From IMG/VR virus record IMGVR_UViG_3300047510_001118, positions 62,001 to 126,000 of that record: DNA of 64,000 nucleotides. One strand, 5' to 3'. Numbering within the stretch: position 1 is the first letter of the stretch; every line of letters starts with the position of its first letter. The translations under genes and the position numbers were made by a program. This document shows, one piece after another, positions 41,245 through 54,748 of the stretch. The notes beneath the pieces are model-generated. The model did no database searches. It was not told the origin of the DNA and was given only the letters and a program-made list of their open reading frames with translations.

Positions 41245-41436
41245 CTAGGCCACGTGGTCTTTACGGGGCACAGGTGTCATCTCTGGGTCTATCATCAGGG
41301 CCCAAAATACCCGATCTTCCCGTATGTAGAACTCTGCGTATGGCTCCACGGCGCAGGCATGTACCCACTCTGCGCACTGCCATAACTGCTCCTGAACACC
41401 CTCGGGTGCCGAAGTTCTATAACAACGTATGTACAT
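41245..41436 (-). CDS. hypothetical protein
   Basis: AGGAGCGAA RBS (41439-41447) before ATG 41436. Confidence 0.65.
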   Translation of the reverse strand: MYIRCYRTSAPEGVQEQLWQCAEWVHACAVEPYAEFYIREDRVFWALMIDPEMTPVPRKDHVA

Positions 41437-41496
41437 AATTCGCTCCTCGCTCACTGTTATTTACACAGAGCTTTAAATACTTCAAGGAGCGGGATT

Positions 41497-41896: not shown

Positions 41897-41949
41897 AAAT
41901 TCCCGTTCAAGAGTCCCCTAAGCCCTAGAAGGGCCAGCGCAAAAATTTT

Positions 41950-42135: not shown

Positions 42136-42525
42136 ATTAGACTAGATCACTGGCCAGTTCGCGAGCTAGATCCTGACTGGGATCTCTTGACAAATACAAA
42201 ACAGCAAATACTGACCAAAACAACCCAAATGCTAGATAACCTATCATATAGTTTACTCCTTTGTAGTATATATGCGATGCCATTTTGGCTAGCACAGAGT
42301 CTGAATAGCCGCGAAGCGGCAGCGCCGCGGTTTTTTTGGCCTCCTAACTTCAACAGTGTATACACTATATTCTACTGTACTCACACTGTACGCTACTGTA
42401 CGCTACTGTATACGCAGCCTAAACGCACTGGCCCCGCTGCACCCACCTAGACCCATTGGTGTAATCTACCTGAGTGAACTGCCAAACTCCATTGACCCCG
42501 CTGCACTGATCTAGTATAATAAGGG

Positions 42526-42825
42526 ATGGACTCTAGACTTAGACAGTTTCTCTTGGGAATTTTGGCTATGTGCACAGTTGTGACCCTATGGCTGTGGGTC
42601 TCTGCCATAGAGATTGAAGAAGAGTTGATGGAACCTGAGTGGACAGTGCCGGAACGGTTCCTTAAGCCCGAAATCGCTGGCCCTAACTCAGTAGAAGATG
42701 ACGTAGACACTACAAAGATCTTAGAGCCCGAACCCCAGCATGGGTGGATAGTGCCTCCAGAACCCCTACGCAAGGCTGCGGGTAAGGTTAAACGGAAGAT
42801 CAAAAAGACTGTGAAAAAAGGGTGA
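42526..42825 (+). CDS. membrane-anchored hypothetical protein
   Basis: TTGACC-17-TATAAT at 42492-42520, ATG 6 nt later; N-terminal TM. Confidence 0.65.
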   Translation: MDSRLRQFLLGILAMCTVVTLWLWVSAIEIEEELMEPEWTVPERFLKPEIAGPNSVEDDVDTTKILEPEPQHGWIVPPEPLRKAAGKVKRKIKKTVKKG

Positions 42826-42847
42826 GAGTATTTGAACTATGCCTATC

Positions 42848-43416
42848 ATCGGTACGGACCGGTCAAGAAAAATATTGCTCATATCCTAGGTTTACCAGTA
42901 GCGACCGGTTGGGAAAACAGTGGCCGGTAGTGACCGCCGGTGTCTACCACCGTGAACCGGTATAGACCGAAACAGTGTTTTCACCATAAAAATCCCCTAG
43001 ATCGATGATAAATTACCATTCGGTCGCGACCGGTTCAAGGGTCTTTTAACCCTAGACACGGTAGGGTCACAGAGGATCTAAGTTAGTGTACGCTAACTCT
43101 AGATGCGAATAGTTCTTATCTACAGCGAAAAAACCGTTGTTCAAAAGCCACATCGGTCTCGACCGGCGGGTTAGTTAGTGCTTACTTAGAGAGAAAGTTA
43201 GTTGGCGCTTACATTTCTAGAAATGACAGGCACCCTCCACGTCCACCCCCGGACTGCCCGATCGAACGCATGTAGGACTAAGGTGTTATTATTATCGCTC
43301 TCTTAGTGTTTGCAGTATACTGTCACTCAGAGATTCTGTCAACCGGTAGTGACCGAATAGTTGAGTAGACTCTAGGGCTTTTCGGTAGTGACCGGTTGAC
43401 ATCGGTAGCGACCGGT
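42848..43416. repeat. non-coding hub of ACCGGT-N4-ACCGGT-like operator repeats
   Basis: copies at 42848, 42894, 42923, 42956, 43019, 43152, 43342, 43381, 43401; no credible ORF. Confidence 0.8.
43314..43342 (-). promoter_or_regulatory. leftward sigma70 promoter into the non-coding hub
   Basis: TTGACA-17-TATACT on the minus strand, with no start codon after its RBS-like AAGAGAGCGA. Confidence 0.7.
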
Positions 43417-43456
43417 GTTATACTATAGACTAGTTAATTAATTCAGGAGCGAACTG

Positions 43457-44158
43457 ATGAAACTGTTAAGTACTGCCAACCCAAAGATCCAGAAGGGTAC
43501 GAAACTGGGTTACTTGAGCTTTATCCTACACCTTGCGCCCGCAGATCTCAGTGGTCGTGAGACTTGCCCCAAGCGCACTCAAGGCTGCACCAGTGCATGT
43601 CTTAATACAGCGGGTCGTGGGGGTATGTTTAAACGGGGTGAAACGACTAACATGATCCAACAAGCTCGCATTCGTAAGACAAGGATGTTCTTTGAAGCTC
43701 GCGACGAATTCATGGCTCAACTAGAGAAAGACATTCGTTTAGGTATTAAGCAGGCCTCTAAGTTGGGATTGACACCCGTATTCCGTTTAAATGGTACCAG
43801 CGATCTTGCCTGGGAGAAGTACGGGATCATTGACAAGTTCCCAGGTGTACAGTTCTATGACTATACTAAGGTTTTGGGTCGCAAGGTCAGCCACTTAAAG
43901 AACTATCACTTGACGTTTTCAGCGGCAGATGGCAACGACAGAGATGTCCAAAAGGCCGTAGATCAAGGCATGAATGTGGCTGTGGTGTTCGATCGTTTGC
44001 CCGAAACTTACATGGGCAGGCGTGTGGAAGACGCTGATCAGCACGATCTGCGCTTCTTAGACCCTAAGGGTACAGTGGCAGGACTCAAAGCCAAGGGCCG
44101 TGCTAAGAAGGACACCACCGGATTTGTTCGTAAGACTATTATCTTGGAGGTTGCATAA
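43457..44158 (+). CDS. GP88-like phage protein
   Basis: CPKRTQGCTSACLNTAGRG, FRLNGTSD, FYDYTK, DLRFLDP. Confidence 0.75.
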   Translation: MKLLSTANPKIQKGTKLGYLSFILHLAPADLSGRETCPKRTQGCTSACLNTAGRGGMFKRGETTNMIQQARIRKTRMFFEARDEFMAQLEKDIRLGIKQASKLGLTPVFRLNGTSDLAWEKYGIIDKFPGVQFYDYTKVLGRKVSHLKNYHLTFSAADGNDRDVQKAVDQGMNVAVVFDRLPETYMGRRVEDADQHDLRFLDPKGTVAGLKAKGRAKKDTTGFVRKTIILEVA

Positions 44159-44346
44159 TGGCTCAATATGATCCGCAGGACGATCTACTGTTAGAGGACT
44201 TGGAGTATCGTAAGCAGATGGCCGTGGCCACCCTAAACGATGCCATCAATCAGATCTATAACATAGAGGGCGATCGCTGGCAAATGGCCTATGATACCCT
44301 GGAAGCCGTCATGGGTAATCTCAAGATAGAGGTTGACAACCGGTAG
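44158..44346 (+). CDS. hypothetical early protein
   Basis: GGAGG RBS; ends EVDNR. Confidence 0.6.
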   Translation: MAQYDPQDDLLLEDLEYRKQMAVATLNDAINQIYNIEGDRWQMAYDTLEAVMGNLKIEVDNR

Positions 44347-44391
44347 GGACCGGTGCTATACTATAGGCTAGATAGTTAAAAAGGAGCGAAG

Positions 44392-44655
44392 ATGTTTACA
44401 GTTGAAATCTACAAGAAGGATGCCCGTACTAAAGTGGGTGAGCGCATGGTCCACAAGGCAGATCATAATACCGATAACCTCTCAATGCTAGAGCACTCTG
44501 TGAAGAATACTTGGCGTGCATCACAGGGCTATCGCTACGAGATCCACGAGACCTATGTAACCCGACGGAACTTGATGGGCGGTGCGGAGTTCAAAGAACG
44601 CTATGACACGCCCTACTATTGCTCACCCAGTTCTGAATCTTATTGGAGTATGTGA
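44392..44655 (+). CDS. hypothetical early protein
   Basis: AAGGAGCGAA RBS; ends SPSSESYWSM. Confidence 0.75.
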   Translation: MFTVEIYKKDARTKVGERMVHKADHNTDNLSMLEHSVKNTWRASQGYRYEIHETYVTRRNLMGGAEFKERYDTPYYCSPSSESYWSM

Positions 44656-44656
44656 T

Positions 44657-44854
44657 ATGGCTACTGTAGACGGCGTAAGAGTACAGGTAGGGGACTGGGT
44701 CTCGTTTAAGAGCGACATAGAACAGTCGGGCAAGATCCAAGCAGTACTGTCGGGCAATAGGTTAGTGCTCACTAACCCTAACGGATTCCAGGGTGACTAC
44801 ATTGGTGGCTCGGAGACTACGATAGAACGTGCAGAGGACTGTTGGATCGAATAG
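44657..44854 (+). CDS. hypothetical early protein
   Basis: GGAG RBS before MATVDG. Confidence 0.6.
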   Translation: MATVDGVRVQVGDWVSFKSDIEQSGKIQAVLSGNRLVLTNPNGFQGDYIGGSETTIERAEDCWIE

Positions 44855-44916
44855 TGGTTGACAACCGGTACTGACCGGTTGTATACTGCAGTTATAGTAA
44901 ACAAAAAGGAGCGAAG

Positions 44917-45180
44917 ATGAATATCAGTACACTGCAAGCATTGGTAGAACAAGAGAATCGTTGGGGTAAATTGTTTGGGCGTCGTGAGCTCAGCCTGCTC
45001 CGCGCAGAAGATCGTCAGAAGATCGCTGGGATCATTGACAGCAGACTCAGCCCTGAGAACTTGACCTGCGATGGCGAGTTAAGCCGTGCAGAAGTGAACA
45101 GTCGCTATCGTCAATTGACCCGTGCGGCAGAAGAGTTGTTGAGCATTGACTCTAGTGTGACCTTTTACGAATTTAACTAA
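44917..45180 (+). CDS. hypothetical early protein
   Basis: AAGGAGCGAA RBS; LSPENLTCDGE. Confidence 0.75.
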   Translation: MNISTLQALVEQENRWGKLFGRRELSLLRAEDRQKIAGIIDSRLSPENLTCDGELSRAEVNSRYRQLTRAAEELLSIDSSVTFYEFN

Positions 45181-45190
45181 GGAGATTGAT

Positions 45191-45328
45191 ATGAACACCT
45201 ATCGTATTCAAGTGCGACTCAGTAACGGTATGGTCACTGAGACCGCTGTACAGGCTATTAGCCCTGCGATCGCCCGTGCCATGGTTGAGAGTCAGTATGG
45301 CGCAGGTTCCTTTTTGGGCTACCTTTAA
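45191..45328 (+). CDS. 45-aa early protein
   Basis: hand-translated, AAGGAG RBS. Confidence 0.6.
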   Translation: MNTYRIQVRLSNGMVTETAVQAISPAIARAMVESQYGAGSFLGYL

Positions 45329-45364
45329 TTGACAACCGGTCATGACCGGTAGTAAAGTATAACT

Positions 45365-45655
45365 ATGAAAGCAGTCAAACACACCGACGGAATACGCAGG
45401 ATCACCATGAAGATGGAGGTTGCTGTGGATGTTCGCCACTTGACCCTGTATGCACTGGACATGGTCAAAGGCGAGCAGTTCCCGGTGGACGTGATTTGTT
45501 CTGCTAACAAAAGGGAGATCTTTGCCCTAGCTCGAGCCAATATTCAGTCATTTGGTAAGGACACAGCAATTCAGAACGTGCCGCTGAGTCTAAACCCTGT
45601 AGAGATACAGCGAGCAATGGATCACGTTCGTAGTGTTTTTCCGGAGATTGATTAA
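45365..45655 (+). CDS. hypothetical early protein (leaderless)
   Basis: ATG 7 nt after the -10 box. Confidence 0.6.
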   Translation: MKAVKHTDGIRRITMKMEVAVDVRHLTLYALDMVKGEQFPVDVICSANKREIFALARANIQSFGKDTAIQNVPLSLNPVEIQRAMDHVRSVFPEID

Positions 45656-45960
45656 TGAATTCGATGCTTAGTTTGTATGGTAGACCTGTGGTCATGTTCG
45701 ATGTTAAGAACAAAGAACATCGTAGGATGGCACACCGGTTCTTGGTGGAACGTTCATGGGGTGGGTGCCCGGTGAGATTCGCCCTGCCCATTGGTGAGGG
45801 CAATGTCTACTCTATGGTCATGCGACTGTTGACCCAGTACTATTCTGCCAAAGAGTTTGGCCCTATTCCACAAGAGGACAGCGATCGTTGGCGTGAAGAT
45901 CTTGTGGCAAATACGCCACAGGTTGAATGGCGTAGAGCAACAGAGGTTGACAACCGGTAG
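45655..45960 (+). CDS. hypothetical early protein
   Basis: WGGCPVRF; ends EVDNR. Confidence 0.65.
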   Translation: MNSMLSLYGRPVVMFDVKNKEHRRMAHRFLVERSWGGCPVRFALPIGEGNVYSMVMRLLTQYYSAKEFGPIPQEDSDRWREDLVANTPQVEWRRATEVDNR

Positions 45961-46092
45961 GGACCGGTGCTATACTAATGATACTGTGAAAGTTAAGGGT
46001 GGTTCTGGCAGTCCTAGGTAAAACCTTAATTCAGAGTCAAATCAAGTGCGTGCCAACTCTGAGCCCAACTATTTTTGAAAAGGAGCGAACCT

Positions 46093-46290
46093 ATGTATGA
46101 CATCGTAAAGAACCCAATCCCCCGTAGCGGTCTATTCACTACGCCTACCCTGGAAGAGATCCAACGTCACATCAGCGGTCTACCCAGCGGTGAGCAGGCA
46201 GTGGCCAGCATGGTGTTCATGTTCACGCTGAACGCCTGTAACAAACTCGTAGAAGACGAGATCCTCTCTAAAGATGTATTCGCACAGTAA
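46093..46290 (+). CDS. hypothetical early protein
   Basis: AAGGAGCGAA RBS before MYDIV. Confidence 0.7.
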   Translation: MYDIVKNPIPRSGLFTTPTLEEIQRHISGLPSGEQAVASMVFMFTLNACNKLVEDEILSKDVFAQ

Positions 46291-46300
46291 GGAGCAGACT

Positions 46301-46576
46301 ATGAAGTCAGTACAAGAGATCAACTCAGCAATCATCCAAGGTACCTTTACCAATGACGAGCTCACTAGCATGATTGACGCTGTGAAGTTTGCACGTAGCC
46401 GTCTAAGTAACCAAATCAAATTCCAGGTGCGCAATGGTAGCACAGTGACATTCACTAGCAAACACGGTATGACTTATAGGGGCACTGTGGAGAAGGTGGC
46501 TATCAAATACGCCACAGTCAACACCCAAGTAGGTCGTTACAAGGTTCCTATGAACATGTTAGAGGTTGTTGCGTAA
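46301..46576 (+). CDS. hypothetical early protein (SH3-like C-terminus)
   Basis: AAGGAG RBS. Confidence 0.7.
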   Translation: MKSVQEINSAIIQGTFTNDELTSMIDAVKFARSRLSNQIKFQVRNGSTVTFTSKHGMTYRGTVEKVAIKYATVNTQVGRYKVPMNMLEVVA

Positions 46577-46656
46577 ACGCAACACACCGGTAACTACCGG
46601 TTGACAAGATAGCGGACCGGTAGTATACTATAGGCTAAGTTAACAAGGAGCGAACT

Positions 46657-46926
46657 ATGTTAAACATCAGCAAAATCGTCAAAGTCTACAACGGACGCAT
46701 AGGTTGTATGTGCGGCTGTAACGGAAAATATTCCTATACCGAAGACGGTGCCAGGAACTATGGCCCGGGCTACGACGTCACAGACAGCATCAATGAGCGT
46801 AGTGTGCGCATCATTGCTAAGAAGATCCTCAGCAATCCGAATGTAGAGTTTGAAAACAATTATGCGTTCGTAGAGGATCGCGTTCGTAACAAAATGCAAA
46901 TGGTGGTTTTTAAGGAGCAGGCATGA
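46657..46926 (+). CDS. hypothetical early protein
   Basis: AAGGAGCGAA RBS; GCMCGCNG. Confidence 0.75.
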   Translation: MLNISKIVKVYNGRIGCMCGCNGKYSYTEDGARNYGPGYDVTDSINERSVRIIAKKILSNPNVEFENNYAFVEDRVRNKMQMVVFKEQA

Positions 46927-47273
46927 TTAAATTTAATTGCGTATTAGAGACAGCCGGAAACGGCTACTGGTCGGACGTTGCTAAGTCTGTGAACGTCACT
47001 AAGATCAGCGTACCCTATGTCAACGAAGACGAGGACTTTGGTGAGCTCTGCGTTTACTTTGACAAGCAATGGGACACCCGCAAGGACGGGTTGATCTATA
47101 CGGACAGCCAGTTCCTTACAATGCTGAAAGACCGGCTCACAGAGTGTGGCTTTGATGCCACAGATGTAGACTACTCAGAGCAGGGCATGCAGGGCAACGA
47201 CTACGTGAGCTTAGACGTAGGCGAAAAGTTCCTAAAAAGTTGGTTCAATGTGGTTGACAAAGTTCTGGATTGA
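46923..47273 (+). CDS. hypothetical early protein
   Basis: coupled ORF; YSEQGMQG. Confidence 0.75.
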   Translation: MIKFNCVLETAGNGYWSDVAKSVNVTKISVPYVNEDEDFGELCVYFDKQWDTRKDGLIYTDSQFLTMLKDRLTECGFDATDVDYSEQGMQGNDYVSLDVGEKFLKSWFNVVDKVLD

Positions 47274-47315
47274 GCTTATACTATTAAAACAGTAACAAAT
47301 TAAGGAGCGAAACTT

Positions 47316-47795
47316 ATGGCAACTCGAAGCAGAATTGGCGTCATGCACGGAGATGTGGTCAAACACGTTTACTGTCACTGGGACGGTTATTTGAGCAATA
47401 ATGGTCAAATCCTACAAGAACACTACGATTCAACAAAGGCCAACAACTTGGTCGCGCTGGGTGACATTAGCAGTCTGCGCCCCGACATTGGTGAGAAGCA
47501 CGACTTTAGCCGTTTGGACAGCCCCCTGTCTGAAGACGAGTACGAAAAGCTCTACGGCAACATGACCACGTTCTACGGACGTGATCGCGGCGAAGAGAAC
47601 ACAGGTTGGAAGGTCAGCCACTCGTTTGAGGACTTCTTGGATCACGCTGCCGGATGCGGTGCTGAATGGTACTACATTCTCAGAGACGGTGTTTGGTATT
47701 GTGGCAACTTGTACAGCAGTGATTCACGCCACTACAAGAACTTGGTAGTACTGCGTGACAGCATTGAGTTGGAGTTGGCAGAGGAGGCAGCATGA
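47316..47795 (+). CDS. conserved phage early protein
   Basis: MATRSRIG...VYCHWDGY. Confidence 0.8.
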   Translation: MATRSRIGVMHGDVVKHVYCHWDGYLSNNGQILQEHYDSTKANNLVALGDISSLRPDIGEKHDFSRLDSPLSEDEYEKLYGNMTTFYGRDRGEENTGWKVSHSFEDFLDHAAGCGAEWYYILRDGVWYCGNLYSSDSRHYKNLVVLRDSIELELAEEAA

Positions 47796-48004
47796 AAGTT
47801 ATCGTAGAGACTGTGCTGACCCAAGAGCTTGAGGTTCCTGACAACTGGGATAGGTACGATGTGTTTGACTTCCTAGCAGAGAATCAATCCTTCCGTACAG
47901 CGTTCCAGGGTGTGAGCAACACGGACCAAACAGCCCGCATCATTGACGTGGGTGTGGTAACTGAAACAGTAACCGAAATGGGCGAGGAGGCCTTTGATGA
48001 GTAA
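47792..48004 (+). CDS. hypothetical early protein
   Basis: GGAGG RBS. Confidence 0.65.
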   Translation: MKVIVETVLTQELEVPDNWDRYDVFDFLAENQSFRTAFQGVSNTDQTARIIDVGVVTETVTEMGEEAFDE

Positions 48005-48179
48005 AATGGCAGAATTGGATATGTATGCTTACGATATTGAGCAACTGTATATCGATGGCTTGACTGAAAAGAACATTGCCAAGACCCTGGACATCCCCGT
48101 AGAGTACGTCTACGCTTGGATGGAGATGAATGGTGTGTGCGACGAAGAGTTCAGCCCTAACGCAACTATTAACTCCTAA
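47994..48179 (+). CDS. small HTH-like protein
   Basis: DGLTEKNIAKTLDIPVEYV. Confidence 0.55.
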   Translation: MMSKMAELDMYAYDIEQLYIDGLTEKNIAKTLDIPVEYVYAWMEMNGVCDEEFSPNATINS

Positions 48180-48190
48180 GGCCCCGCTAT

Positions 48191-48418
48191 ATGCAGATCA
48201 CAATTCAGAACCTTAGCCCTGTTGAAATCGAAATTGCGGATGCGCTTTGGGCCTGCGAGGATTTGAATGAGGTCAGAGACTACGTTCTCAGACTGCCAAA
48301 ATCATTGAGAGATCGGGCTCATGCTCTTTATCATACAATGATCTACGAAGTTATTGATCAGGAAATGGATGTTAACGATCTAGAAATGGCGAATCAAGTC
48401 ATTGACAAATATCGTTAA
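48191..48418 (+). CDS. hypothetical early protein
   Basis: 75-aa ORF. Confidence 0.6.
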   Translation: MQITIQNLSPVEIEIADALWACEDLNEVRDYVLRLPKSLRDRAHALYHTMIYEVIDQEMDVNDLEMANQVIDKYR

Positions 48419-48476
48419 TCTGCTATAATAATAAGACGATGCGGAACAGCATCTCTTTAACTACAGAGGAATTAAA

Positions 48477-48752
48477 ATGAAATACACTTTTTCTAAAGAA
48501 AGCAAGACTTTTAAAGTTTTCAACGCTCTTTATCAGGGCGAGCGTTTGACACAGAGCCAAGCCGTTAAACGTTTCGGCGTTAAGAATTTGGCTGCTGAAG
48601 CAAGCCGTATCCGTCAAAACGGTTACGCTGTCTACGCAAAGAGCCGTACTGCTGGTAATGGTGTTACCGTTACTGAGTACGAAATGGGTAATCCAAGTCG
48701 TGAGATCGTTGCTTTAGGTTACAAAGCCAAAGCAATGGGCATCACTATCTAA
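48477..48752 (+). CDS. winged-HTH DNA-binding protein
   Basis: LTQSQAVKRFGVKNLAAEASRIRQNGYAV followed by a beta-hairpin wing; own promoter; strong codon bias. Confidence 0.7.
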   Translation: MKYTFSKESKTFKVFNALYQGERLTQSQAVKRFGVKNLAAEASRIRQNGYAVYAKSRTAGNGVTVTEYEMGNPSREIVALGYKAKAMGITI

Positions 48753-48758
48753 GAATAA

Positions 48759-48895
48759 ACTCGCCGCGATGGCGATGTGAAGTCCTAGGATTCGCTCCCC
48801 TAGGCAACGGCTGAACCGATTCGCTCCCGGGTAGGCCACCGGAAGGGTACTGTAAAAGGTACCCTTCCACCTTATGTGGGTATTCAAAATACCAG
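48759..48895. ncRNA. structured intergenic RNA carrying two hairpins with identical ATTCGCTCC loops
   Basis: hairpins at 48762-48776, 48784-48804, 48809-48837 and 48841-48868 (10-bp perfect stem). Confidence 0.6.
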
Positions 48896-48954
48896 TTGAC
48901 AGTTTGGAGGATCGGCGCTATACTATGCACATAGTAAGAAGTTAGGAGCGAAAG

Positions 48955-49239
48955 ATGGAAAAAGGAACTTGCCCAGTCTGTAATGGATCAACCCGTGTGC
49001 CCGCTGGGGATAACAAATATAAATCAGTTATCGCTGGCTACGACCAGGCTACTGATACTTTTGGTTGTACCAACTGCGGGGGTCAGTATATGTACGGTCG
49101 CCCAACAGGTGAAGTTCGCTTGAACAAGGCGGGAGAGCCCTGCACTCACAAATATTCTTCTAAGACAGTGGGACGGTGCTTGACGGAATACACCTGCGAG
49201 CATTGTGGGGATCGATTCCAGATTGACAGCGGTGACTGA
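48955..49239 (+). CDS. zinc-ribbon early protein
   Basis: CPVC, CTNC, CEHC; AGGAGCGAA RBS. Confidence 0.75.
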   Translation: MEKGTCPVCNGSTRVPAGDNKYKSVIAGYDQATDTFGCTNCGGQYMYGRPTGEVRLNKAGEPCTHKYSSKTVGRCLTEYTCEHCGDRFQIDSGD

Positions 49240-49281
49240 TTGTGCTATACTATAGGTATAGTGAATGATAAGGAGCGAAAA

Positions 49282-49533
49282 ATGTTGACACTAGATAAAA
49301 TCCGTAAAATTGAATTCCGTGGCGAAGAGTTTGAACAGTTCCACGGCAGTCCGTTTGATCGCGGTGCAGCAGATAGTTATTACGGGAGACCTCAGGACCC
49401 GCATTGGTTTCCTGAAGGCACTTACAAGGGACGCCGCATTGACAGCCCTGACATGACTATGAAAGAACTTCGTGCTTACTTCGCAGGCTACGAATACAAC
49501 GAACAGCATGGCGACAAGAAGGACTGGGGTTAA
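49282..49533 (+). CDS. conserved phage early protein
   Basis: HGSPFDRGAADSYYGR; AAGGAGCGAA RBS. Confidence 0.75.
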   Translation: MLTLDKIRKIEFRGEEFEQFHGSPFDRGAADSYYGRPQDPHWFPEGTYKGRRIDSPDMTMKELRAYFAGYEYNEQHGDKKDWG

Positions 49534-49625
49534 TGGCTGACCTTGTAACCTATGTCCTACTTCGCATCATCCAGGTGGCGATACTGGTGTTTGCGATAGC
49601 AGTTTTTATCAACGGTTTTTTCTAA
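49533..49625 (+). CDS. 30-aa hydrophobic peptide
   Basis: hand-translated, coupled ORF. Confidence 0.45.
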   Translation: MADLVTYVLLRIIQVAILVFAIAVFINGFF

Positions 49626-49634
49626 GGAGCGAAT

Positions 49635-50258
49635 ATGCCTAATTGGTGCAATAACAGAGTGGTGATCAGCCACGAAGACTCAAGCAAGATGGAAGCCTTG
49701 GTAGAGGCTATCAAAGATGGTAAGTTCTGTAATCATGTGATTCCTGTGCCCGAAAGTCTACATATCGTAGCAGGCTCTGTAGGTGACCCTGATGAGCAGA
49801 AGAAGCTCGAAGAGGACACAGCCCGTAACCTAGAAGTCCACGGCTATGGCAACTGGTATGACTTCTGTGTGAATCGCTGGGGAACCAAGTGGGATGTAGA
49901 CCCTTACGATCCTACAGATGTTAAGGTTGAGAACAACACCATTGAGTTTGGTTTTGATTCAGCCTGGGCACCACCCGTGGGAGTCTACGATGAACTAGTG
50001 AATCAGGGCTTCGAAGTAGAGGCAACTTACTACGAGCCAGGCATGGCCTTTGTGGGTCGTTGGCATAATGGCTATGATGACTGCGTTGAGTTCGGCGGTG
50101 AGACCTCTGCGACTGTGCGTGATGTCATCGGAGAAGAGCTAGATGATGAGTATGGTATCTCAGAGACCATGGCTGAATACGAAGAGATGGACAAGGACGA
50201 AACTACCCAGTGGTATGAAGAGGGTGTGGAATCCAAAGGTTTAGAGCCACACAAATAA
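49635..50258 (+). CDS. YubB/DUF1281-like ferredoxin-domain protein
   Basis: MPNWCNN, WYDFC...WGTKWD, FDSAWAPP, YYEPG. Confidence 0.8.
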   Translation: MPNWCNNRVVISHEDSSKMEALVEAIKDGKFCNHVIPVPESLHIVAGSVGDPDEQKKLEEDTARNLEVHGYGNWYDFCVNRWGTKWDVDPYDPTDVKVENNTIEFGFDSAWAPPVGVYDELVNQGFEVEATYYEPGMAFVGRWHNGYDDCVEFGGETSATVRDVIGEELDDEYGISETMAEYEEMDKDETTQWYEEGVESKGLEPHK

Positions 50259-50412
50259 CAGCCACTAGGCCCTGCAACACGCCTGGGCACTTCGCTGGTG
50301 TGGCTTTTTTACAACAGGAATACCCTACTTAACCGTAGGGTTTTTCTGCTTTTTGGTTGACGGTTTGGGTGGCCCCTGCTATACTATAGAAACTGTAACA
50401 AAGGAGCGAGCA

Positions 50413-50565
50413 ATGCTGACACTGAAAGACGCTAAGAAACTGTGTGGGATGGATCCGCGCACTACGGCACGTTGGTATGCGCAGGGCTACTATATGAAGG
50501 CTGACGGACGCTGGTACATTACTGTAGGCGGTGTAGAGTATGTGAAATACTACACCGGAAACTAG
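50413..50565 (+). CDS. small early protein
   Basis: AAGGAGCGAG RBS before MLTLKD. Confidence 0.65.
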   Translation: MLTLKDAKKLCGMDPRTTARWYAQGYYMKADGRWYITVGGVEYVKYYTGN

Positions 50566-50610
50566 GGTTTTTGGTTGACAACCGGTAGTGACCGGTGCTA
50601 TAATATGAAC

Positions 50611-50829
50611 ATGAACTTAGAAACTATCGCCAAACACACAGCCCTGTTCTTTACCCTAGTAGGGGCCCTATTCACAGCACTAGCCTGGGATCCCATGAAC
50701 ATCCTGTTCTTGAACTTGGGCAGTCTGCTGTATCTCTTTTGGGCCTACAGGGTTAGGGATTGGAATCTCGTAGCAGTCAATGCAGGACTGTTGACAATCT
50801 ATGTGATTGGCGCTATAATTAGACTATGA
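50611..50829 (+). CDS. small multi-TM protein (PnuC-like segment)
   Basis: three hydrophobic helices; leaderless start. Confidence 0.55.
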   Translation: MNLETIAKHTALFFTLVGALFTALAWDPMNILFLNLGSLLYLFWAYRVRDWNLVAVNAGLLTIYVIGAIIRL

Positions 50830-50972
50830 TGAAACTTCAAGTAAAGATTCCCCAAAAGACTCGTGCACATCGTGTGCTTTGGGACAGAGACTTGCCTTTT
50901 CGTCCAAAAACGGAACAGAGCAAGACACAGTATCGCCGCAAGGCTAAACATCCTAACAAGGAGATTGCATAA
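50826..50972 (+). CDS. 48-aa basic protein
   Basis: hand-translated; RAHRVLWDRDLPFRPK...YRRKAKH. Confidence 0.6.
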   Translation: MMKLQVKIPQKTRAHRVLWDRDLPFRPKTEQSKTQYRRKAKHPNKEIA

Positions 50973-51154
50973 TGAAAGAAGGCTTCATGTTTGTCACTGG
51001 ACTCTTGCTGACGCTGGGCGGAGTGGGTGGAATTGAGAACTCTATGACGGACAGCGAACTGCTCTCATCGCTTGCTGTTGCTGTTGTGGGCTTGGGAATC
51101 TTTGGTTGTTCTGCTCTGATGATTCAGCAGAAAGAATTGGACAACCAAATCTAA
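50972..51154 (+). CDS. two-TM small protein
   Basis: AAGGAG RBS. Confidence 0.65.
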   Translation: MKEGFMFVTGLLLTLGGVGGIENSMTDSELLSSLAVAVVGLGIFGCSALMIQQKELDNQI

Positions 51155-51249
51155 AATATTGGTTGACACCCAATCCAAACGGTGTTACAATATGGATACA
51201 GTGAAAGGTTCACTGTTAACTTTAGGCAACTATAGAAAGGCAACTTAAA

Positions 51250-51618
51250 ATGGCAACTAGTAAACTGTACAACGTGGTAGGTATCTCTACCCTCAATGGC
51301 GACGCCAAAGTTCGCTTCGCAAATGATGTGATGCGCATCAAAGTGTTGGCTAAGAATGGTCACACTGACATCAATCTTGTAGAGCTTCCCTCTGCGATGT
51401 TGAAAACTGATGCAGCTCGCTTCTTGAGCAATCTCCCTGAGTTCCAAACTGCTGTGGCCAAGGCTGCTGTAGCAGAGTACCTTGACAAGAACGATCGTGC
51501 TCCTAAGGCACGTGTCGAAGTCAAGACTGCGGTGAAGAAAGCCGTTGAGACCAAGCCCGCAAAGGCCAAGGCTCCACGTGTGACTACTCCTGCTGAGGAC
51601 GAAGACGCACCCTTCTAA
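51250..51618 (+). CDS. hypothetical early protein with Ala/Lys-rich tail
   Basis: own promoter at 51163. Confidence 0.7.
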   Translation: MATSKLYNVVGISTLNGDAKVRFANDVMRIKVLAKNGHTDINLVELPSAMLKTDAARFLSNLPEFQTAVAKAAVAEYLDKNDRAPKARVEVKTAVKKAVETKPAKAKAPRVTTPAEDEDAPF

Positions 51619-51689
51619 GGTAGGGATCAAAAGCGGTTGACAACAGCCGCTTTTGGTGCTATACTTTAACAAATAGTAAGGAGCGTGAG

Positions 51690-51824
51690 ATGGAACTTAT
51701 TCTAGCATTCGTAGCAGGACTCATCGTAATGGATCTTCTCTGGGCTTGGCGCATGGGCATTCCCCAAATGCTTTGGGCTCGTTGGAAGTATCGTAAATCT
51801 CTCAAAGATCAGGAGCAATCATGA
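51690..51824 (+). CDS. 44-aa membrane peptide
   Basis: AAGGAGCGTG RBS. Confidence 0.55.
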   Translation: MELILAFVAGLIVMDLLWAWRMGIPQMLWARWKYRKSLKDQEQS

Positions 51825-51949
51825 CCAGTCATATCATAGCATTCATCGCAGGTGTCGTAGTGGCCACAGTAGGTTTCACAGGCGTGGCTCAGATCGCAGA
51901 CTCAGGCATCCAGAAGGTTCAGGCAATATCAAAAGAAGCGGCTAAGTAA
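51821..51949 (+). CDS. 42-aa membrane peptide
   Basis: AGGAG RBS, ATGA coupling. Confidence 0.55.
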   Translation: MTSHIIAFIAGVVVATVGFTGVAQIADSGIQKVQAISKEAAK

Positions 51950-51956
51950 TCAACCT

Positions 51957-52034
51957 GGGCCTCTAGCTCATGTTGGTTAGAGCAGTGGACTCATAATCCA
52001 TTGGTGCGGAGTTCGACTCTCCGGGGGCCCACCA
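51957..52034 (+). tRNA. tRNA CAT anticodon, probably Ile2 (lysidine, reads AUA)
   Basis: cloverleaf with GTGGA-CTCATAA-TCCAT arm, GTTCG T-loop, encoded CCA; resembles ileX rather than Met tRNAs. Confidence 0.9.
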
Positions 52035-52038
52035 GATC

Positions 52039-52123
52039 GCGACTGTGGTGAAATCGGTAGACACAAGAGACTTAAAATCTCTCGCTGCAAGGCGTGCCAG
52101 TTCGATTCTGGCCAGTCGCACCA
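52039..52123 (+). tRNA. tRNA-Leu(TAA)
   Basis: AGAGA-CTTAAAA-TCTCT arm, long variable arm, CCA. Confidence 0.93.
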
Positions 52124-52129
52124 AACAAT

Positions 52130-52206
52130 CTGCCCGTAGCTCAACCGGATAGAGCAACGGCCTTCTAAGCCGTAGGTTGGGGGTTCGATTCCCTCCGGGC
52201 AGGCCA
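52130..52206 (+). tRNA. tRNA-Arg(TCT)
   Basis: ACGGC-CTTCTAA-GCCGT arm, CTGCCCG/CGGGCAG acceptor stem, CCA. Confidence 0.93.
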
Positions 52207-52291
52207 GTGTTGCGAAAAAACAACACATTTTTTGGTTGACAATTTGGCTGACCCCTGCTATACTATTGATACTGTGATAACGAAGGAGCGA

Positions 52292-52633
52292 ATGATGATA
52301 CTAGTAATCGACACACAATACATGGAAAACTACGGTGCCCACGATTGGGACGGCAAGGGCGAGTGCCCCCAGTACTGGAAGATGAAGGGCGGCAGTTCCT
52401 ACAAGATCACCGGCATTCCTTCCGGTGTAGACTTCCAGGCAGTCATCGAACAGGTGACCCCAGAGATCGAGCGTAGCAACGACTACTGCCGTGAATACAT
52501 CATCGGCACCCACAGTGAAGCAGATGACTACCTCTCTGAGTTTGAGAAGAGCCAACTGGACTACGAGGGTGAGATCCAGTTTCCGGAACCCACAATCCAG
52601 TACGGGTCTTTGGTTGACAAAGTCGCGGCTTGA
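52292..52633 (+). CDS. conserved phage early protein
   Basis: TQYMENYGAHDWDGKGECPQYWKMKGG. Confidence 0.75.
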   Translation: MMILVIDTQYMENYGAHDWDGKGECPQYWKMKGGSSYKITGIPSGVDFQAVIEQVTPEIERSNDYCREYIIGTHSEADDYLSEFEKSQLDYEGEIQFPEPTIQYGSLVDKVAA

Positions 52634-52671
52634 TCGTATACTATTAAAACTGTAACTAAGGAGCGAACCAA

Positions 52672-53004
52672 ATGACAGACATCAAAACTATCGTAGATCA
52701 AGCAGTGGCCCTGGCTCAGGACGCTAGCCAGCAGTACTTCCAAAACACACTGAAAGGCCAGGATCAATTCGCCTGCGGCTTTGCCTGGGTTGATGTATAC
52801 GTAGAGCGTACCAATTCAAAAGAAGCCAAAGAGCTAATCGCTGCAGGCTTTAAGAAAGACTACAAGCCCAAGTGCTTGAGCATGTGGAACCCAGGCGGTA
52901 TCAACGTACAGAACATTGACACCAAAGAAGCGGGTGCTGATGCTATGGCTCGTTATCTACAGGCCCAGGGCTTCAAAGCCTACGCAGGCAGTCGATTAGA
53001 CTAA
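52672..53004 (+). CDS. conserved phage early protein
   Basis: ACGFAWV...QNIDTKEAGA. Confidence 0.75.
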   Translation: MTDIKTIVDQAVALAQDASQQYFQNTLKGQDQFACGFAWVDVYVERTNSKEAKELIAAGFKKDYKPKCLSMWNPGGINVQNIDTKEAGADAMARYLQAQGFKAYAGSRLD

Positions 53005-53064
53005 GTATTGACAGCCCCCAGGGGGCTGTAGTATAATTACATTTTTAACAGAGAAAGAGCGAAC

Positions 53065-53916
53065 ATGACTAATTTGGCAACTAAACCCGCAGGCTATCGT
53101 GTACTGAGTCTTGAGCAAGAAAGTCCTGCTCAAACACGTGAAACAGACGCAGAGATCATTGAACGCTTGCGTGAGCGTTTTGACATCCTTGATGACATGA
53201 CTCGTGCTGTAAAGAAAGGCGCTGTACGTGCAATGATCGTCAGTGGTGCTCCAGGCGTAGGTAAGAGCTTTGGTGTTGAGAAAGTTCTGGGCAAGCATGA
53301 TCTAATGGCCAATATCGCCAACGATGAAAAGCTCAAGAAGTACGAGATCGTCAAGGGTGCGATGTCAGCAATTGGCTTGTACTCAAAGCTCTATGAGTTC
53401 TCAGCAGAGAAGAACATCCTAGTGTTCGACGACTGTGACTCAGTACTGTTAGATGATCTTAGCCTTAACATTCTAAAGGCTGCTCTAGATACAAGTAAGA
53501 AGCGTACCATCCATTGGAACACTGACAGCAGACTGTTACGCAGTGAAGGTGTGCCCAATTCGTTTGAGTTCAAGGGTGGTGCTATCTTTATTACCAATAT
53601 CAACTTTCAGAACATCAAGAGCAAGAAGTTACAGGATCACTTGGCAGCTCTGGAAAGCCGTTGCCACTACATTGATCTAACCATACACACAGAGCGTGAG
53701 AAGATGTTGCGCATCAAACAGATCGTAGGCGATGGCATGCTCAACGAGTATGAGTTCTCAGAAGAGCAGACAGCAGAGCTTATTGGGTTTATTGACCTTA
53801 ACAAGAAGCGTCTACGCGAGCTGAGCCTGCGTACAGTACTAAAGACTGCAGACCTTATGCGCAGTTTCCCTGGGGACAAATGGCAGCGTGTAGCACAGAT
53901 CAGCCTAATGAAGTAA
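53065..53916 (+). CDS. P-loop AAA-like ATPase
   Basis: Walker A GAPGVGKS, Walker B LVFDDCD, FITN. Confidence 0.85.
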   Translation: MTNLATKPAGYRVLSLEQESPAQTRETDAEIIERLRERFDILDDMTRAVKKGAVRAMIVSGAPGVGKSFGVEKVLGKHDLMANIANDEKLKKYEIVKGAMSAIGLYSKLYEFSAEKNILVFDDCDSVLLDDLSLNILKAALDTSKKRTIHWNTDSRLLRSEGVPNSFEFKGGAIFITNINFQNIKSKKLQDHLAALESRCHYIDLTIHTEREKMLRIKQIVGDGMLNEYEFSEEQTAELIGFIDLNKKRLRELSLRTVLKTADLMRSFPGDKWQRVAQISLMK

Positions 53917-53917
53917 C

Positions 53918-53934
53918 GCTAGTTCGCTCCTAGC
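53918..53934. other. hairpin displaying TTCGCTC(C), antisense to the early RBS
   Basis: GCTAG-TTCGCTC-CTAGC. Confidence 0.6.
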
Positions 53935-53937
53935 CTT

Positions 53938-53965
53938 AGAGGATCCTTCGGGGTCCTCTTTTTTT
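53938..53965 (+). terminator. intrinsic terminator ending the early array
   Basis: AGAGGATCC-TTCG-GGGTCCTCT followed by a T-run. Confidence 0.9.
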
Positions 53966-54176
53966 ATCAAAAATTTTTTCGTCGAGGAGGTTAGAAAAAA
54001 TCTTTTCGAAAAAAAATTCGGTGAGGGGTAGTAAAATAAAACTGTTGTAAAAAAACAACATAGTGGTAACAAATCACCAGGCCACCGAAAAAATACCCTA
54101 TACTTTAATTTTTTACGGTGCAGTTTTTTAAAACCAGAGTGGACCCATTCGGGCCAAGTTCCTCGCTATATACTGT

Positions 54177-54398
54177 ATGATCAGATTCCCCCAAGAAACT
54201 ATCCAAAAGATTGTTCAAACACTCGCAGCCATAACAGCCACAGGTTTTATTACCTTTACAGTAACGCACCTACATGCGCCATTGATATCCTGGCTGTTAT
54301 GGTTTACACATTGGATTGTTGCCATCCCCATAGCCTTAGGCACTGTGTTTTGGCTAGCACCCCTATACAGTCGGTGGCTTAAAAAACTGGTTGGATAA
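54177..54398 (+). CDS. two-TM small protein (DUF2798-like)
   Basis: hydrophobic 73-aa ORF. Confidence 0.55.
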   Translation: MIRFPQETIQKIVQTLAAITATGFITFTVTHLHAPLISWLLWFTHWIVAIPIALGTVFWLAPLYSRWLKKLVG

Positions 54399-54469
54399 GT
54401 ATATAAGTACTCCGCAAATTTTTTTTGCGGGCTATTTTTTAAAACCGGGCAGGACCCATTGGAGCAACT

Positions 54470-54748
54470 GTGGCAAAACGTAAATCTGCAACTGTAGACA
54501 TAGAAACAAACCTCCCCAACGACGACTTTTCAAAACTCACTGAAGACCAAACTCTGGATCTATTAGAACTAACGTTCACAGCACTGTGTCAACGCTTAGA
54601 GCAAGGTGGAGTAGACCCAGAACTGATCACTGGCACACTGTTTGGCATATTTGCTGATCGTATGGCTGAGCTAGGAGATCGTGAATCATTTGACTGTATG
54701 TTAGCCGAAGCCATCGAAACACCATGGCAGGACTATACTCTACACTAA
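54470..54748 (+). CDS. hypothetical protein
   Basis: GGAG RBS, GTG start. Confidence 0.65.
   Translation: MAKRKSATVDIETNLPNDDFSKLTEDQTLDLLELTFTALCQRLEQGGVDPELITGTLFGIFADRMAELGDRESFDCMLAEAIETPWQDYTLH

What the first reader, a model, noticed from the sequence alone, without database searches (positions are those of the whole stretch)
43396..53065. Early genes built as promoter + AT-rich spacer + AAGGAGCGAA cassettes
Seen: 18 sigma70 promoters in ~9.7 kb. Eleven plus-strand genes share AGGAGCGAA (43445, 44382, 44907, 46081, 46646, 47303, 48944, 49271, 49625, 52284, 52659), with another on the minus strand at 41439-41447 and variants at 50401, 51678 and 53054. The CGAA extension does not pair with the standard anti-SD. 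Inference: the leader is a shared address for coordinated post-transcriptional control, comparable in concept to T4 RegB cleavage of GGAG or to CsrA binding; the promoter density may also sequester host RNAP.
Basis: partly seen in the sequence, partly recalled or inferred. Interest (0 to 1): 0.68.

Follow-up and report, generated by a model that had tools for sequence, protein, structure and literature searches.

The report
Phage early-gene tag with matching antisense RNA loops
The repeated promoter-plus-AGGAGCGAA leaders are real, and the same phage strand also encodes hairpin loops carrying the exact complement UUCGCUCC; leader word and loop word change together in related phages, so the CGAA extension most likely addresses early mRNAs to the phage's own antisense RNA.

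Summary
Observation confirmed. There are 18 near-consensus sigma-70 promoters at 43396-53037. AGGAGCGAA occurs 13 times in the window against 0.26 expected, and 11 copies lie 2-5 nt before start codons.

The window belongs to a 278-kb uncultured freshwater jumbo phage, a distant relative of PA5oct. The cassettes match the known PeSL class of T4-type phages.

New finding: the early strand carries the exact complement of the tag in hairpin loops. Two loops follow a winged-helix gene (48784-48837). One follows an AAA-ATPase gene (53918-53934), just before the terminator that closes the region.

In 19 distinct relatives anchored on the ATPase, 12 pair GGAGCG leaders with CGCUCC loops. The other 7 pair GAGGGC leaders with GCCCUC loops. 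None is mixed.

In 114 loci found through the loop module alone, tagged starts number 425 on the module's strand and 7 on the other. Predicted tag-loop duplexes are -14 to -19 kcal/mol, against about -8 with the canonical 16S tail.

Best reading: antisense occlusion of early Shine-Dalgarno sites, giving coordinated control of early translation. Expression of the RNA and the direction of the effect are untested.

No RegB, RegA, CsrA or Hfq homologue was found, though the RegB and RegA searches had no working control.

The parts
43396..43459 (+). Cassette 1: promoter 43396-43424, tag AGGAGCGAA 43445-43453, ATG 43457 (GP88-family protein, 233 aa)
44333..44394 (+). Cassette 2: promoter 44333-44362 with CGGT-N3-GACCG palindrome in the spacer, tag 44382-44390, ATG 44392
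44858..44919 (+). Cassette 3: promoter 44858-44887 (palindrome in spacer), tag 44907-44915, ATG 44917
45329..45367 (+). Cassette 4, untagged: promoter 45329-45358 (palindrome in spacer). ATG 45365 lies 7 nt after the -10 hexamer, so this is a candidate leaderless mRNA
45947..46095 (+). Cassette 5: promoter 45947-45976 (palindrome in spacer), leader of about 110 nt, tag 46081-46089, ATG 46093
46601..46659 (+). Cassette 6: promoter 46601-46629, tag 46646-46654, ATG 46657
47254..47318 (+). Cassette 7: promoter 47254-47282, tag 47303-47311, ATG 47316
48402..48752 (+). Untagged cassette: perfect 12/12 promoter 48402-48429, ordinary GAGGAA SD, and a winged-helix (HTH_39) gene 48477-48752. Its 3'UTR carries anti-tag loops 1 and 2
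   Evidence: an orthologue in distant contig G001 is also followed by an anti-tag hairpin plus terminator
48759..48778 (+). Hairpin 0 of the 3'UTR RNA. Its stem CGCC/GGCG is CGUC/GACG in relative L083, a compensatory change
48784..48804 (+). Anti-tag hairpin 1: stem CCUAGG/CCUAGG, 9-nt loop AUUCGCUCC (48790-48798), complementary to GGAGCGAAU
   Evidence: 100% identical in L083 while the flanks diverge
48809..48837 (+). Anti-tag hairpin 2: outer stem GGCU/GGCC, inner stem CCG/CGG, 9-nt loop AUUCGCUCC (48819-48827). The inner part is the CCG-AUUCGCUCC-CGG module found in 116 IMG/VR stretches
48841..48868 (+). 11-bp GC-rich hairpin closing the two-loop RNA. No U-run follows, so the 3' end of this RNA is uncertain
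48896..48957 (+). Cassette 9: promoter 48896-48924, tag 48944-48952, ATG 48955
49223..49284 (+). Cassette 10: promoter 49223-49251, tag 49271-49279, ATG 49282
49625..49637 (+). Tag 49625-49633 with no promoter of its own, ATG 49635 (207-aa ORF). It overlaps the stop of a small hydrophobic ORF
50357..50415 (+). Cassette 12: promoter 50357-50385, variant tag AGGAGCGAG 50402-50410, ATG 50413. Preceded by hairpin 50322-50341
50575..50613 (+). Untagged cassette: 12/12 promoter 50575-50604 (palindrome in spacer), ATG at 50605/50611. Candidate leaderless mRNA
50791..50828 (+). Untagged cassette: 12/12 promoter 50791-50819, ATG 50826 lies 7 nt after the -10. Candidate leaderless mRNA
51163..51252 (+). 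Untagged cassette: promoter 51163-51191, longer leader, ATG 51250 (122-aa ORF). Its orthologue in G001 is followed by an anti-tag hairpin
51637..51692 (+). Cassette 16: promoter 51637-51665, variant tag AGGAGCGUG 51679-51687, ATG 51690
52236..52297 (+). Cassette 17: promoter 52236-52264, tag 52284-52292, ATG 52292 or 52295. Preceded by hairpin 52207-52226
52614..52674 (+). Cassette 18: promoter 52614-52642, tag 52659-52667, ATG 52672
53008..53916 (+). Last cassette: 12/12 promoter 53008-53037, variant tag AAGAGCGAA 53055-53063 (no GGAG core), and AAA-ATPase gene 53065-53916 (phrog_1250)
   Evidence: The leader pairs at -14.2 kcal/mol with its own 3'UTR loop and at -2.9 with the anti-SD
53918..53934 (+). 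Anti-tag hairpin 3: stem GCUAG/CUAGC, loop UUCGCUC. The word UUCGCUCC spans 53923-53930. It starts 2 nt after the ATPase stop codon
   Evidence: This is the orthologous position of the anti-tag RNA in all 19 distinct ATPase-anchored relatives
53938..53966 (+). Intrinsic terminator closing the early region: 9-bp stem, 4-nt loop, then a U-run
41434..41447 (-). Tag AGGAGCGAA followed by UU and ATG of a small minus-strand gene (about 41245-41436)

Best explanation
The stretch is the early region of an uncultured freshwater jumbo phage, transcribed by host RNA polymerase. It is built from PeSL-type cassettes: a consensus sigma-70 promoter, a 5'UTR of about 20-27 nt rich in A and U, a Shine-Dalgarno (SD) site and an ATG.

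The first cistron after most promoters carries a private extended SD, (A)GGAGCGAA. Its 3' extension is not there for the ribosome. It makes the SD complementary over 8-11 nt to hairpin loops reading (A/G)UUCGCUCC. Those loops lie on the same strand, in the 3'UTRs of two early genes: the winged-helix gene (two loops) and the AAA-ATPase gene (one loop, just before the terminator that ends the region).

Shown by computation: the complementarity, the display of the word in loops, the reality of the module's hairpin through covarying stems, and the joint switch of leader word and loop word between phage clades.

Inferred: the 3'UTR or terminator fragments accumulate during infection and pair with tagged leaders. 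The predicted duplex (-14 to -19 kcal/mol, against about -8 with the 16S tail) competes with the 30S subunit for the SD. Translation of promoter-proximal early cistrons is then damped or shut off together, possibly with duplex-triggered decay. Untagged internal cistrons and the candidate leaderless cassettes would escape this control.
For: (1) Three plus-strand copies of the complement lie in the early region. All are intergenic and in hairpin loops.

(2) In every relative where the ATPase gene end is held (19 distinct sequences), the anti-word lies within about 200 nt after the ATPase stop, usually on top of the terminator.

(3) Twelve lineages pair GGAGCG leaders (2-13 per locus; none counted in the short L015 fragment) with CGCUCC loops (1-3). 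Seven pair GAGGGC leaders (1-7 in six of them; L024 scored none by the pattern) with GCCCUC loops (2-5). None is mixed, and the two types form clean clades on the ATPase tree.

(4) An unbiased screen of 80 further ATPase-anchored loci looked for the best complementary 6-mer pair between 3'UTR and leaders. Only these two word pairs score high (scores 6-18, about 26 loci); the rest is noise.

(5) The module CCG-AUUCGCUCC-CGG followed by a U-run occurs in 116 IMG/VR stretches. In 114 loci fetched by that module alone, GGAGCGA-N2-8-ATG occurs 425 times on the module's strand and 7 times on the other. After GGAG at SD positions, CGA follows in 383 of 1021 cases.

(6) The module's stem is real: 71 distinct sequences, 97.7% of cells paired, 10 of 13 pairs with double changes, covariation score 0.605 against 0.147 in shuffles (0 of 500 reach it).

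(7) In close relatives of the window the word persists in quite different stems: AGAGG/CCUCU, A-run/U-run, or single-stranded next to a hairpin.

(8) Several ATPase leaders keep GAGCGAA while lacking the GGAG core (window, L015, L017). Selection therefore acts on the extension itself.

(9) Duplex energies are. Predicted leaders are short and the tag is mostly unpaired.

(10) Only the 8-mer is shared between loop and leader contexts, so the loops are not inverted copies of a cassette.
Against: There are no expression data. Only DNA metagenomes hold the sequence, so neither the existence of a stable RNA species nor any effect on translation has been observed.

The A/B switch is a single event on the tree, so the co-variation, though it involves many sites, is phylogenetically one observation.

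The anti-tag RNA is driven by the same early promoters as its targets, and loops (1-5) are fewer than tagged leaders (12 or more). Shut-off therefore requires differential stability, which is assumed.

The window's two-loop RNA lacks a clear terminator.

A more distant clade (G001) has the module but heterogeneous leaders.

Loop invariance in the 116-stretch set is partly imposed by the exact-match search.
Confidence: 0.68

Rival explanations
1. Same tag-loop pairing, opposite or different outcome. The loops pair with tagged leaders in cis or in trans to stabilise or protect early mRNAs, for example by 5'-3' end pairing that blocks RNases, or to set their decay. They would not repress translation.
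For: All the complementarity and co-variation evidence applies equally. The ATPase mRNA carries both a tag variant and a loop, so pairing within one molecule is possible. Pairing between the 5' and 3' UTRs of one mRNA is known in bacteria (icaR, PMC3868564; hbs, PMC5737220).
Against: Pairing covers the SD itself, and in known cases this represses initiation. The leaders are short and predicted to be open, so nothing needs to be unfolded for activation.
Confidence: 0.15
2. Cassette homogenisation only. The CGAA extension is carried along because PeSL-type cassettes spread and are homogenised by recombination. It has no function of its own, and the complementary loops are coincidental.
For: The whole cassette of about 60 nt is repeated, not just the tag. 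PeSL elements are known recombination substrates (PMC2839356). Relative L083 has an extra ORF plus cassette exactly at a cassette junction.
Against: This does not explain the reverse complement in hairpin loops on the same strand, its fixed place after the ATPase gene in 19 relatives, the joint switch to GAGGGC/GCCCUC, or the 425-to-7 strand asymmetry around the loop module. It also does not explain leaders that keep GAGCGAA without GGAG.
Confidence: 0.06
3. A DNA-level site. A phage or host DNA-binding, modifying or nicking protein recognises GGAGCGAA/TTCGCTCC in duplex DNA in either orientation. A change in its specificity would change all sites together.
For: Co-variation of a word and its complement is also what an orientation-independent duplex DNA site would show.
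Against: Orientation is strictly partitioned. The sense word lies 2-8 nt before ATGs and the antisense word lies in loops of covarying RNA-type hairpins, often terminators. A duplex DNA site needs neither constraint.
Confidence: 0.05
4. A protein reads the tag: a RegB-like nuclease that cuts the GGAG of tagged leaders, or a CsrA- or RegA-like repressor.
For: T4 uses RegB and RegA for early mRNA shut-off (established knowledge). A host CsrA cannot be excluded because the host is unknown. Most early ORFs have no known family, so a novel RNA-binding protein could be hiding among them.
Against: No RegB, RegA, CsrA or Hfq family match in the genome (the RegB and RegA searches had no working control). 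A protein that binds the tag would not bind its complement, so this leaves the loops unexplained.
Confidence: 0.04
5. The host 16S tail complements GGAGCGAA, so the tag is simply a very strong SD for an unusual host.
For: The host is unknown, so its 16S 3' end could not be read.
Against: The 16S 3' tail is nearly universal (established knowledge) and pairs only with AGGAG. Related phages use a different extension (GAGGGCA). Both types occur in one metagenome, 3300008108: contig names, types. Each phage encodes the perfect complement itself.
Confidence: 0.02

Closest known systems
PeSL (promoter-early stem-loop) cassettes of T4-type phages (Arbiol et al. 2010, PMC2839356; Comeau et al. 2014, PMC4122927)
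   Same: Repeated composite elements: a near-consensus sigma-70 promoter, a stem-loop next to or inside the promoter (here a palindrome between -35 and -10, as in RB49), and an SD plus ATG at the 3' end. They flank small ORFan genes in a plastic early region. An indel at a cassette junction is seen against relative L083.
   Different: PeSL papers treat the SD as ordinary and the stem-loops as terminators or recombination sites. No private SD extension and no loop complementary to it is described there. The phage here is only a distant T4 relative.
c4 antisense RNA of phages P1 and P7
   Same: A phage RNA whose loop sequences pair with the ribosome binding region of a phage mRNA made from the same transcription unit. 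The pairing words differ between related phages and define specificity (review PMC12197685).
   Different: c4 controls one target (icd/ant) in a temperate phage's immunity circuit. Here a dozen or more early cistrons of a virulent-type jumbo phage share the target word, and the loops sit in 3'UTRs or terminators.
icaR 3'UTR anti-SD motif and the C-rich loops of RNAIII and RsaE in Staphylococcus aureus
   Same: A C-rich anti-SD-like word in a 3'UTR or hairpin loop pairs with the SD and blocks initiation (PMC3868564, PMC6158497).
   Different: Those words pair with the generic G-rich SD core. Here specificity comes from a 3' extension (CGAA or GC-A) that the ribosome does not use, which gives a private code.
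T4 RegB and RegA early-mRNA shut-off
   Same: Functional analogy: coordinated post-transcriptional silencing of early messages through their SD regions.
   Different: Those effectors are proteins (a nuclease and a repressor). No homologue was found here, and the candidate effector is an RNA.
CsrB/RsmZ multi-loop sponge RNAs
   Same: One RNA with several hairpins (up to five in type-B relatives) that all display the same short word in their loops.
   Different: CsrB loops mimic the SD (GGA) to titrate a protein. These loops carry the complement of the SD and would bind mRNAs directly. No CsrA gene is present in the phage.

Membership tests
PeSL-type regulatory cassettes | Near-consensus sigma-70 early promoter, repeated many times | tested here: met
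   18 plus-strand sites with at least 10 of 12 consensus positions in 9.7 kb
PeSL-type regulatory cassettes | Stem-loop next to or inside the promoter | tested here: met
   A CGGT-N3-GACCG palindrome lies in the spacer of promoters 44333, 44858, 45329, 45947 and 50575, and overlaps 43396. Hairpins lie directly upstream of or over promoters 50357, 51637 and 52236. Not every cassette has one
PeSL-type regulatory cassettes | SD and start codon at the 3' end; elements flank small ORFan genes | tested here: met
   most ORFs have no Pfam family
PeSL-type regulatory cassettes | Mediates recombinational shuffling or mini-circles | tested here: inconclusive
   One indel of an ORF plus cassette at a cassette junction against L083. 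No direct test was possible
Antisense RNA acting on a ribosome binding site (c4, RNAIII or icaR type) | Contiguous complementarity to the SD region of the targets | tested here: met
   8-11 nt of pairing, -14 to -19 kcal/mol
Antisense RNA acting on a ribosome binding site (c4, RNAIII or icaR type) | The complementary word is exposed in a hairpin loop of a structured RNA | tested here: met
   stems covary
Antisense RNA acting on a ribosome binding site (c4, RNAIII or icaR type) | Target and regulator words co-vary between relatives | tested here: met
   All 19 distinct loci fall into type A or type B with none mixed (two had no scored leader of either type), and an unbiased 6-mer screen agrees. 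This is a single switch event on the tree
Antisense RNA acting on a ribosome binding site (c4, RNAIII or icaR type) | The RNA is expressed and changes target translation or stability | not testable with these tools
   No RNA run holds the sequence
T4 RegB system | A RegB endoribonuclease gene in the phage | tested here: inconclusive
   No PF10715 match, but the control search rang nowhere and the record is 75% complete
Csr/Rsm system | A CsrA protein, and sponge loops carrying GGA | tested here: not met
   No CsrA in the genome, with a working control. The loops carry UUCGCUCC, not GGA. A host CsrA was not testable
Any Rfam family | A covariance-model match to the loop RNAs | tested here: not met
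   Only three tRNAs at E up to 1 in 40000-56000

The most novel reading that the evidence does not exclude
The tag and anti-tag pair is a private, evolvable translation code that also works between phages. Anti-tag RNA accumulating in an infected cell would silence the early genes of a superinfecting relative that uses the same tag, as c4 does in P1/P7 heteroimmunity. Switching to a new word pair (GGAGCGAA/UUCGCUCC to GAGGGC/GCCCUC) would escape that exclusion. This would explain why whole sets of leaders and loops switched together, and why both types occur in the same lake metagenome.
Probability: 0.15. Interest if true: 0.92.

Novelty: new variant of a known kind. Interest (0 to 1): 0.8.

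Why it matters
It would be a regulon-wide RNA switch in a virulent-type jumbo phage. A dozen or more early mRNAs would be addressed by one short private extension of the Shine-Dalgarno sequence, and read by loops built into 3'UTRs and terminators.

Early-to-middle shut-off would then be done with RNA, where T4 uses proteins.

The system is widespread: more than 100 environmental viral contigs carry the module.

Two natural word pairs that do not cross-pair by sequence offer a ready-made compensatory experiment. They are also candidate parts for orthogonal translation control.

It also suggests that the stem-loops of PeSL-type cassettes can carry sequence-specific regulatory information, not only termination.

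Tried and rejected
- **Near-identity search against cultured phages.** Only the tRNA genes matched.
- **PA5oct.** This closest cultured relative has the ATPase homologue gp126, followed 44 nt later by another gene and in a different gene order. It was not pursued.
- **RegB, RegA, CsrA and Hfq family searches of the whole record.** No match. The RegB and RegA controls were silent, so those two are weak negatives.
- **Rfam.** No family apart from tRNAs.
- **Scan for two copies of ATTCGCTCC 12-40 nt apart in IMG/VR.** Mostly chance hits, but it did yield the close relative L083.
- **MAFFT plus RNAalifold on ten terminal hairpins.** The stems were aligned out of register and the result was uninformative. 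It was replaced by a covariance-model alignment.
- **Search for a third leader/loop word pair.** Contig G001 has heterogeneous leaders (GGAACACA and others) but carries only the type-A module, and no loops complementary to the other words. The 80 ATPase-anchored loci gave no third pair.
- **Sequencing runs.** Only freshwater and lake DNA metagenomes hold the stretch. There are no RNA runs.
- **T-loop or tRNA-like reading of the loop (UUCG...).** Rejected, because type-B loops (GCCCUC) share nothing with it except complementarity to their own leaders.
- **Loops as inverted copies of a leader cassette.** Rejected, because only the 8-mer is shared.

Full report
**What the window is.** The window is bases 62001-126000 of a single 278,126-bp IMG/VR viral contig with 39.4% G+C, estimated 75% complete. 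Its DnaB helicase is about 50% identical to that of Pseudomonas jumbo phage PA5oct, and less to that of Agrobacterium phage Atu_ph07. Near-identical DNA occurs only in freshwater and lake metagenomes. The finding lies inside a 20-kb island of higher G+C (46-48%, window 38000-58000).

**The observation.** It is confirmed in every respect.
- AGGAGCGAA occurs 13 times in the window against 0.26 expected.
- Eleven of the 12 plus-strand copies in the whole genome lie at 43445-52667. Each ends 2-5 nt before a start codon.
- There are 18 plus-strand promoters with at least 10 of 12 consensus positions between 43396 and 53037.
- The tag belongs to promoter-proximal cistrons. GGAGCG lies in the 20 nt before 9 of 36 promoter-proximal genes, against 9 of 286 others. 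After GGAG at Shine-Dalgarno (SD) positions, CGA follows in 12 of 27 cases in the early region and 7 of 157 elsewhere.
- Internal cistrons use ordinary SDs such as GGAGG or AGGAGA.
- Predicted 5'UTRs are 18-27 nt long and largely open.

The plus strand also carries the exact complement of the tag, in hairpin loops.
- *After the winged-helix gene.* This gene (48477-48752) has its own perfect promoter and an untagged leader. Downstream of it lie a small hairpin, then CCUAGG-AUUCGCUCC-CCUAGG (48784-48804), then CCG-AUUCGCUCC-CGG inside an outer stem (48809-48837), then an 11-bp hairpin. The fold has a z-score of -3.0.
- *After the AAA-ATPase gene.* Two nucleotides after its stop codon (gene 53065-53916) lies GCUAG-UUCGCUC-CUAGC (53918-53934). 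A strong intrinsic terminator follows (53938-53966) and closes the early region.
- These are the only plus-strand copies of TTCGCTCC in the early region.

**Relatives.** Eighty loci fetched through DnaB and one fetched through a double-loop pattern (L083) show the same design. In every relative that holds the end of the ATPase gene (19 distinct sequences), the anti-word follows the stop codon. There are usually two hairpins, and the last one sits on top of the terminator.

Promoter cassettes are conserved throughout. In one clade, however, the leader word is GAGGGC(A) instead of GGAGCGAA. In exactly those phages the 3'UTR RNA carries two to five loops reading GCCCUC.

| Type | Lineages | Leaders per locus | Loops per locus | Words of the other type |
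|---|---|---|---|---|
| A | 12 | GGAGCG, 2-13 (0 in the short L015 fragment) | CGCUCC, 1-3 | none |
| B | 7 | GAGGGC, 1-7 (0 by the pattern in L024) | GCCCUC, 2-5 | one stray GGAGCG start, in L019 |

On an ATPase tree the two types are clean clades with 100/100 support. The switch is therefore one event, but it moved many leaders and several loops together.

An unbiased screen covered 80 more ATPase-anchored loci. For each locus it found the 6-mer pair that is most frequent both in the 3'UTR and, as its reverse complement, just before ATGs. It returns only these two word pairs with high scores, in about 26 loci. The other loci give noise.

**The loop module on its own.** The exact 15-mer CCGATTCGCTCCCGG followed within 4-22 nt by six T occurs in 116 IMG/VR stretches, with 75 distinct contexts.
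- In the 114 loci fetched in this way, with no reference to leaders, GGAGCGA-N2-8-ATG occurs 425 times on the module's strand and 7 times on the other. CGA follows GGAG in 383 of 1021 SD contexts.
- A covariance-model alignment of 71 distinct modules gives 97.7% paired cells. Ten of 13 pairs show double changes. The covariation score is 0.605 against 0.147 in shuffles, with 0 of 500 shuffles reaching it.
- The invariance of the apical three pairs and the loop in this set is partly imposed by the exact-match search. In the sets anchored on DnaB and the ATPase, which were not chosen by loop sequence, the word also persists while the stems differ completely.
- Between the window and L083, the two-loop core (48778-48848) is 100% identical while both flanks diverge. 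The upstream hairpin shows a compensatory CGCC/GGCG to CGUC/GACG change.

**Energetics and the role of the extension.**
- Tagged leaders pair with the loops at -14 to -19 kcal/mol, and with the canonical 16S tail at only -7 to -8.5.
- Untagged internal cistrons show the reverse: -3 to -10 with the loops and mostly -9 to -12 with the tail.
- The ATPase leader in the window (AAGAGCGAAC) has almost no SD (-2.9). It still pairs at -14.2 with the loop in its own 3'UTR.
- Relatives L015 and L017 likewise keep GAGCGAA without GGAG.
- Only the 8-mer is shared between loop and leader contexts, so the loops are not inverted cassette copies.

**Interpretation.** Two things are settled by computation. The tag has a conserved, loop-displayed complement on the same transcripts, and the two co-evolve.

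The mechanism is inferred. 3'UTR or terminator fragments bearing the loops would pair with tagged SDs and occlude them. That would give coordinated feedback or shut-off of promoter-proximal early cistrons. Untagged genes and three apparently leaderless cassettes would escape. In those three, the ATG lies at or about 7 nt after the -10 hexamer (45365, 50605/50611, 50826).

I put about 0.68 on pairing with repression, and about 0.15 on the same pairing with a stabilising or other outcome.

Weaknesses:
- There are no RNA data.
- The word switch is a single phylogenetic event.
- The regulator and its targets share promoters, so differential RNA stability has to be assumed.
- A more distant clade (G001) carries the module after the winged-helix orthologue and after the orthologue of the window gene 51250-51618, but its leaders are heterogeneous.

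**Comparison with what is known.** The cassettes fit the PeSL class of T4-type phages: a sigma-70 promoter, a stem-loop that in RB49 often lies between -35 and -10, and an SD plus ATG (PMC2839356, PMC4122927). That part is a new member of a known kind.

The pairing logic resembles three known cases:
- P1/P7 c4 RNA, where loops pair with the ribosome binding site and the words set specificity (PMC12197685).
- The icaR 3'UTR anti-SD motif (PMC3868564).
- The C-rich loops of RNAIII and RsaE.

I found no description of a private SD extension shared by a whole early regulon and read by 3'UTR or terminator loops. The literature searches and Rfam gave nothing. These searches cannot prove absence.

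No RegB, RegA, CsrA or Hfq homologue was found.

**Verdict.** I rate it a new variant of a known kind, with interest 0.8.

Noticed in passing
window 42850-43414, and promoter spacers at 44341, 44866, 45337, 45955, 50583: The palindromic word CGGT-N3-GACCG occurs at 13 distinct sites (16 matches against 0.08 expected). Eight sites form an array in a non-coding stretch of about 600 bp just upstream of the first early promoter. The others sit between -35 and -10 of early promoters. It could be an operator for a repressor (possibly the winged-helix protein), a set of iterons, or the PeSL stem-loop.
   Followed up: partly
window 45358-45367, 50604-50613, 50819-50828: Three consensus promoters have an ATG at or about 7 nt after the -10 hexamer and no SD, so these are candidate leaderless mRNAs. 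Similar cassettes recur in relatives (TATAAT/TATATT followed by 2-6 nt and ATG). They would escape tag-based control.
   Followed up: partly
window 51957-52206: Three tRNA genes (Met-CAT, Leu-TAA, Arg-TCT) lie inside the early region, between two cassettes.
   Followed up: no
window 38000-58000: An island of 46-48% G+C in a genome of 39%. It covers the early region and the adjacent DnaB, primase and helicase genes.
   Followed up: no
window 48924-48944 versus L083:2560-3100: Close relative L083 carries an extra small ORF with its own promoter and tagged leader. It is inserted exactly between the -10 region and the tag of the window's cassette. This is the kind of indel expected from PeSL-type shuffling.
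   Followed up: partly
window 1-30777: A long minus-strand block of genes of about 250-500 aa. It includes two radical-SAM proteins (one with a B12-binding domain) and, on the plus strand, a class I/II aminotransferase. It may be a modification or biosynthesis cluster.
   Followed up: no
G000:C1:31046-31071 (outside the window): Two GGAGCGAA words lie 10 nt apart upstream of a large minus-strand gene (28917-31043). Tagged starts also occur for genes at 32164-32835, 34047-34490 and 79119-80048, far from the early cluster.
   Followed up: no
L202 (G001:C1:1144-1400): In a more distant clade the ATPase gene is followed not by the anti-tag RNA but by a small cysteine-rich ORF that I read, from memory and without a test, as GcrA-like.
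   Followed up: no
IMG/VR metagenome 3300008108 (L024 versus L128, L213, L317): Type-B (GCCCUC) and type-A (UUCGCUCC) phages occur in the same metagenome (contig names; types).
   Followed up: no
window 49535-49624: A 29-codon hydrophobic ORF ends inside the tag of the next gene (TAA at 49622-49624, overlapping AGGAGCGAA at 49625). This suggests coupling, or occlusion of that tag by terminating ribosomes.
   Followed up: no
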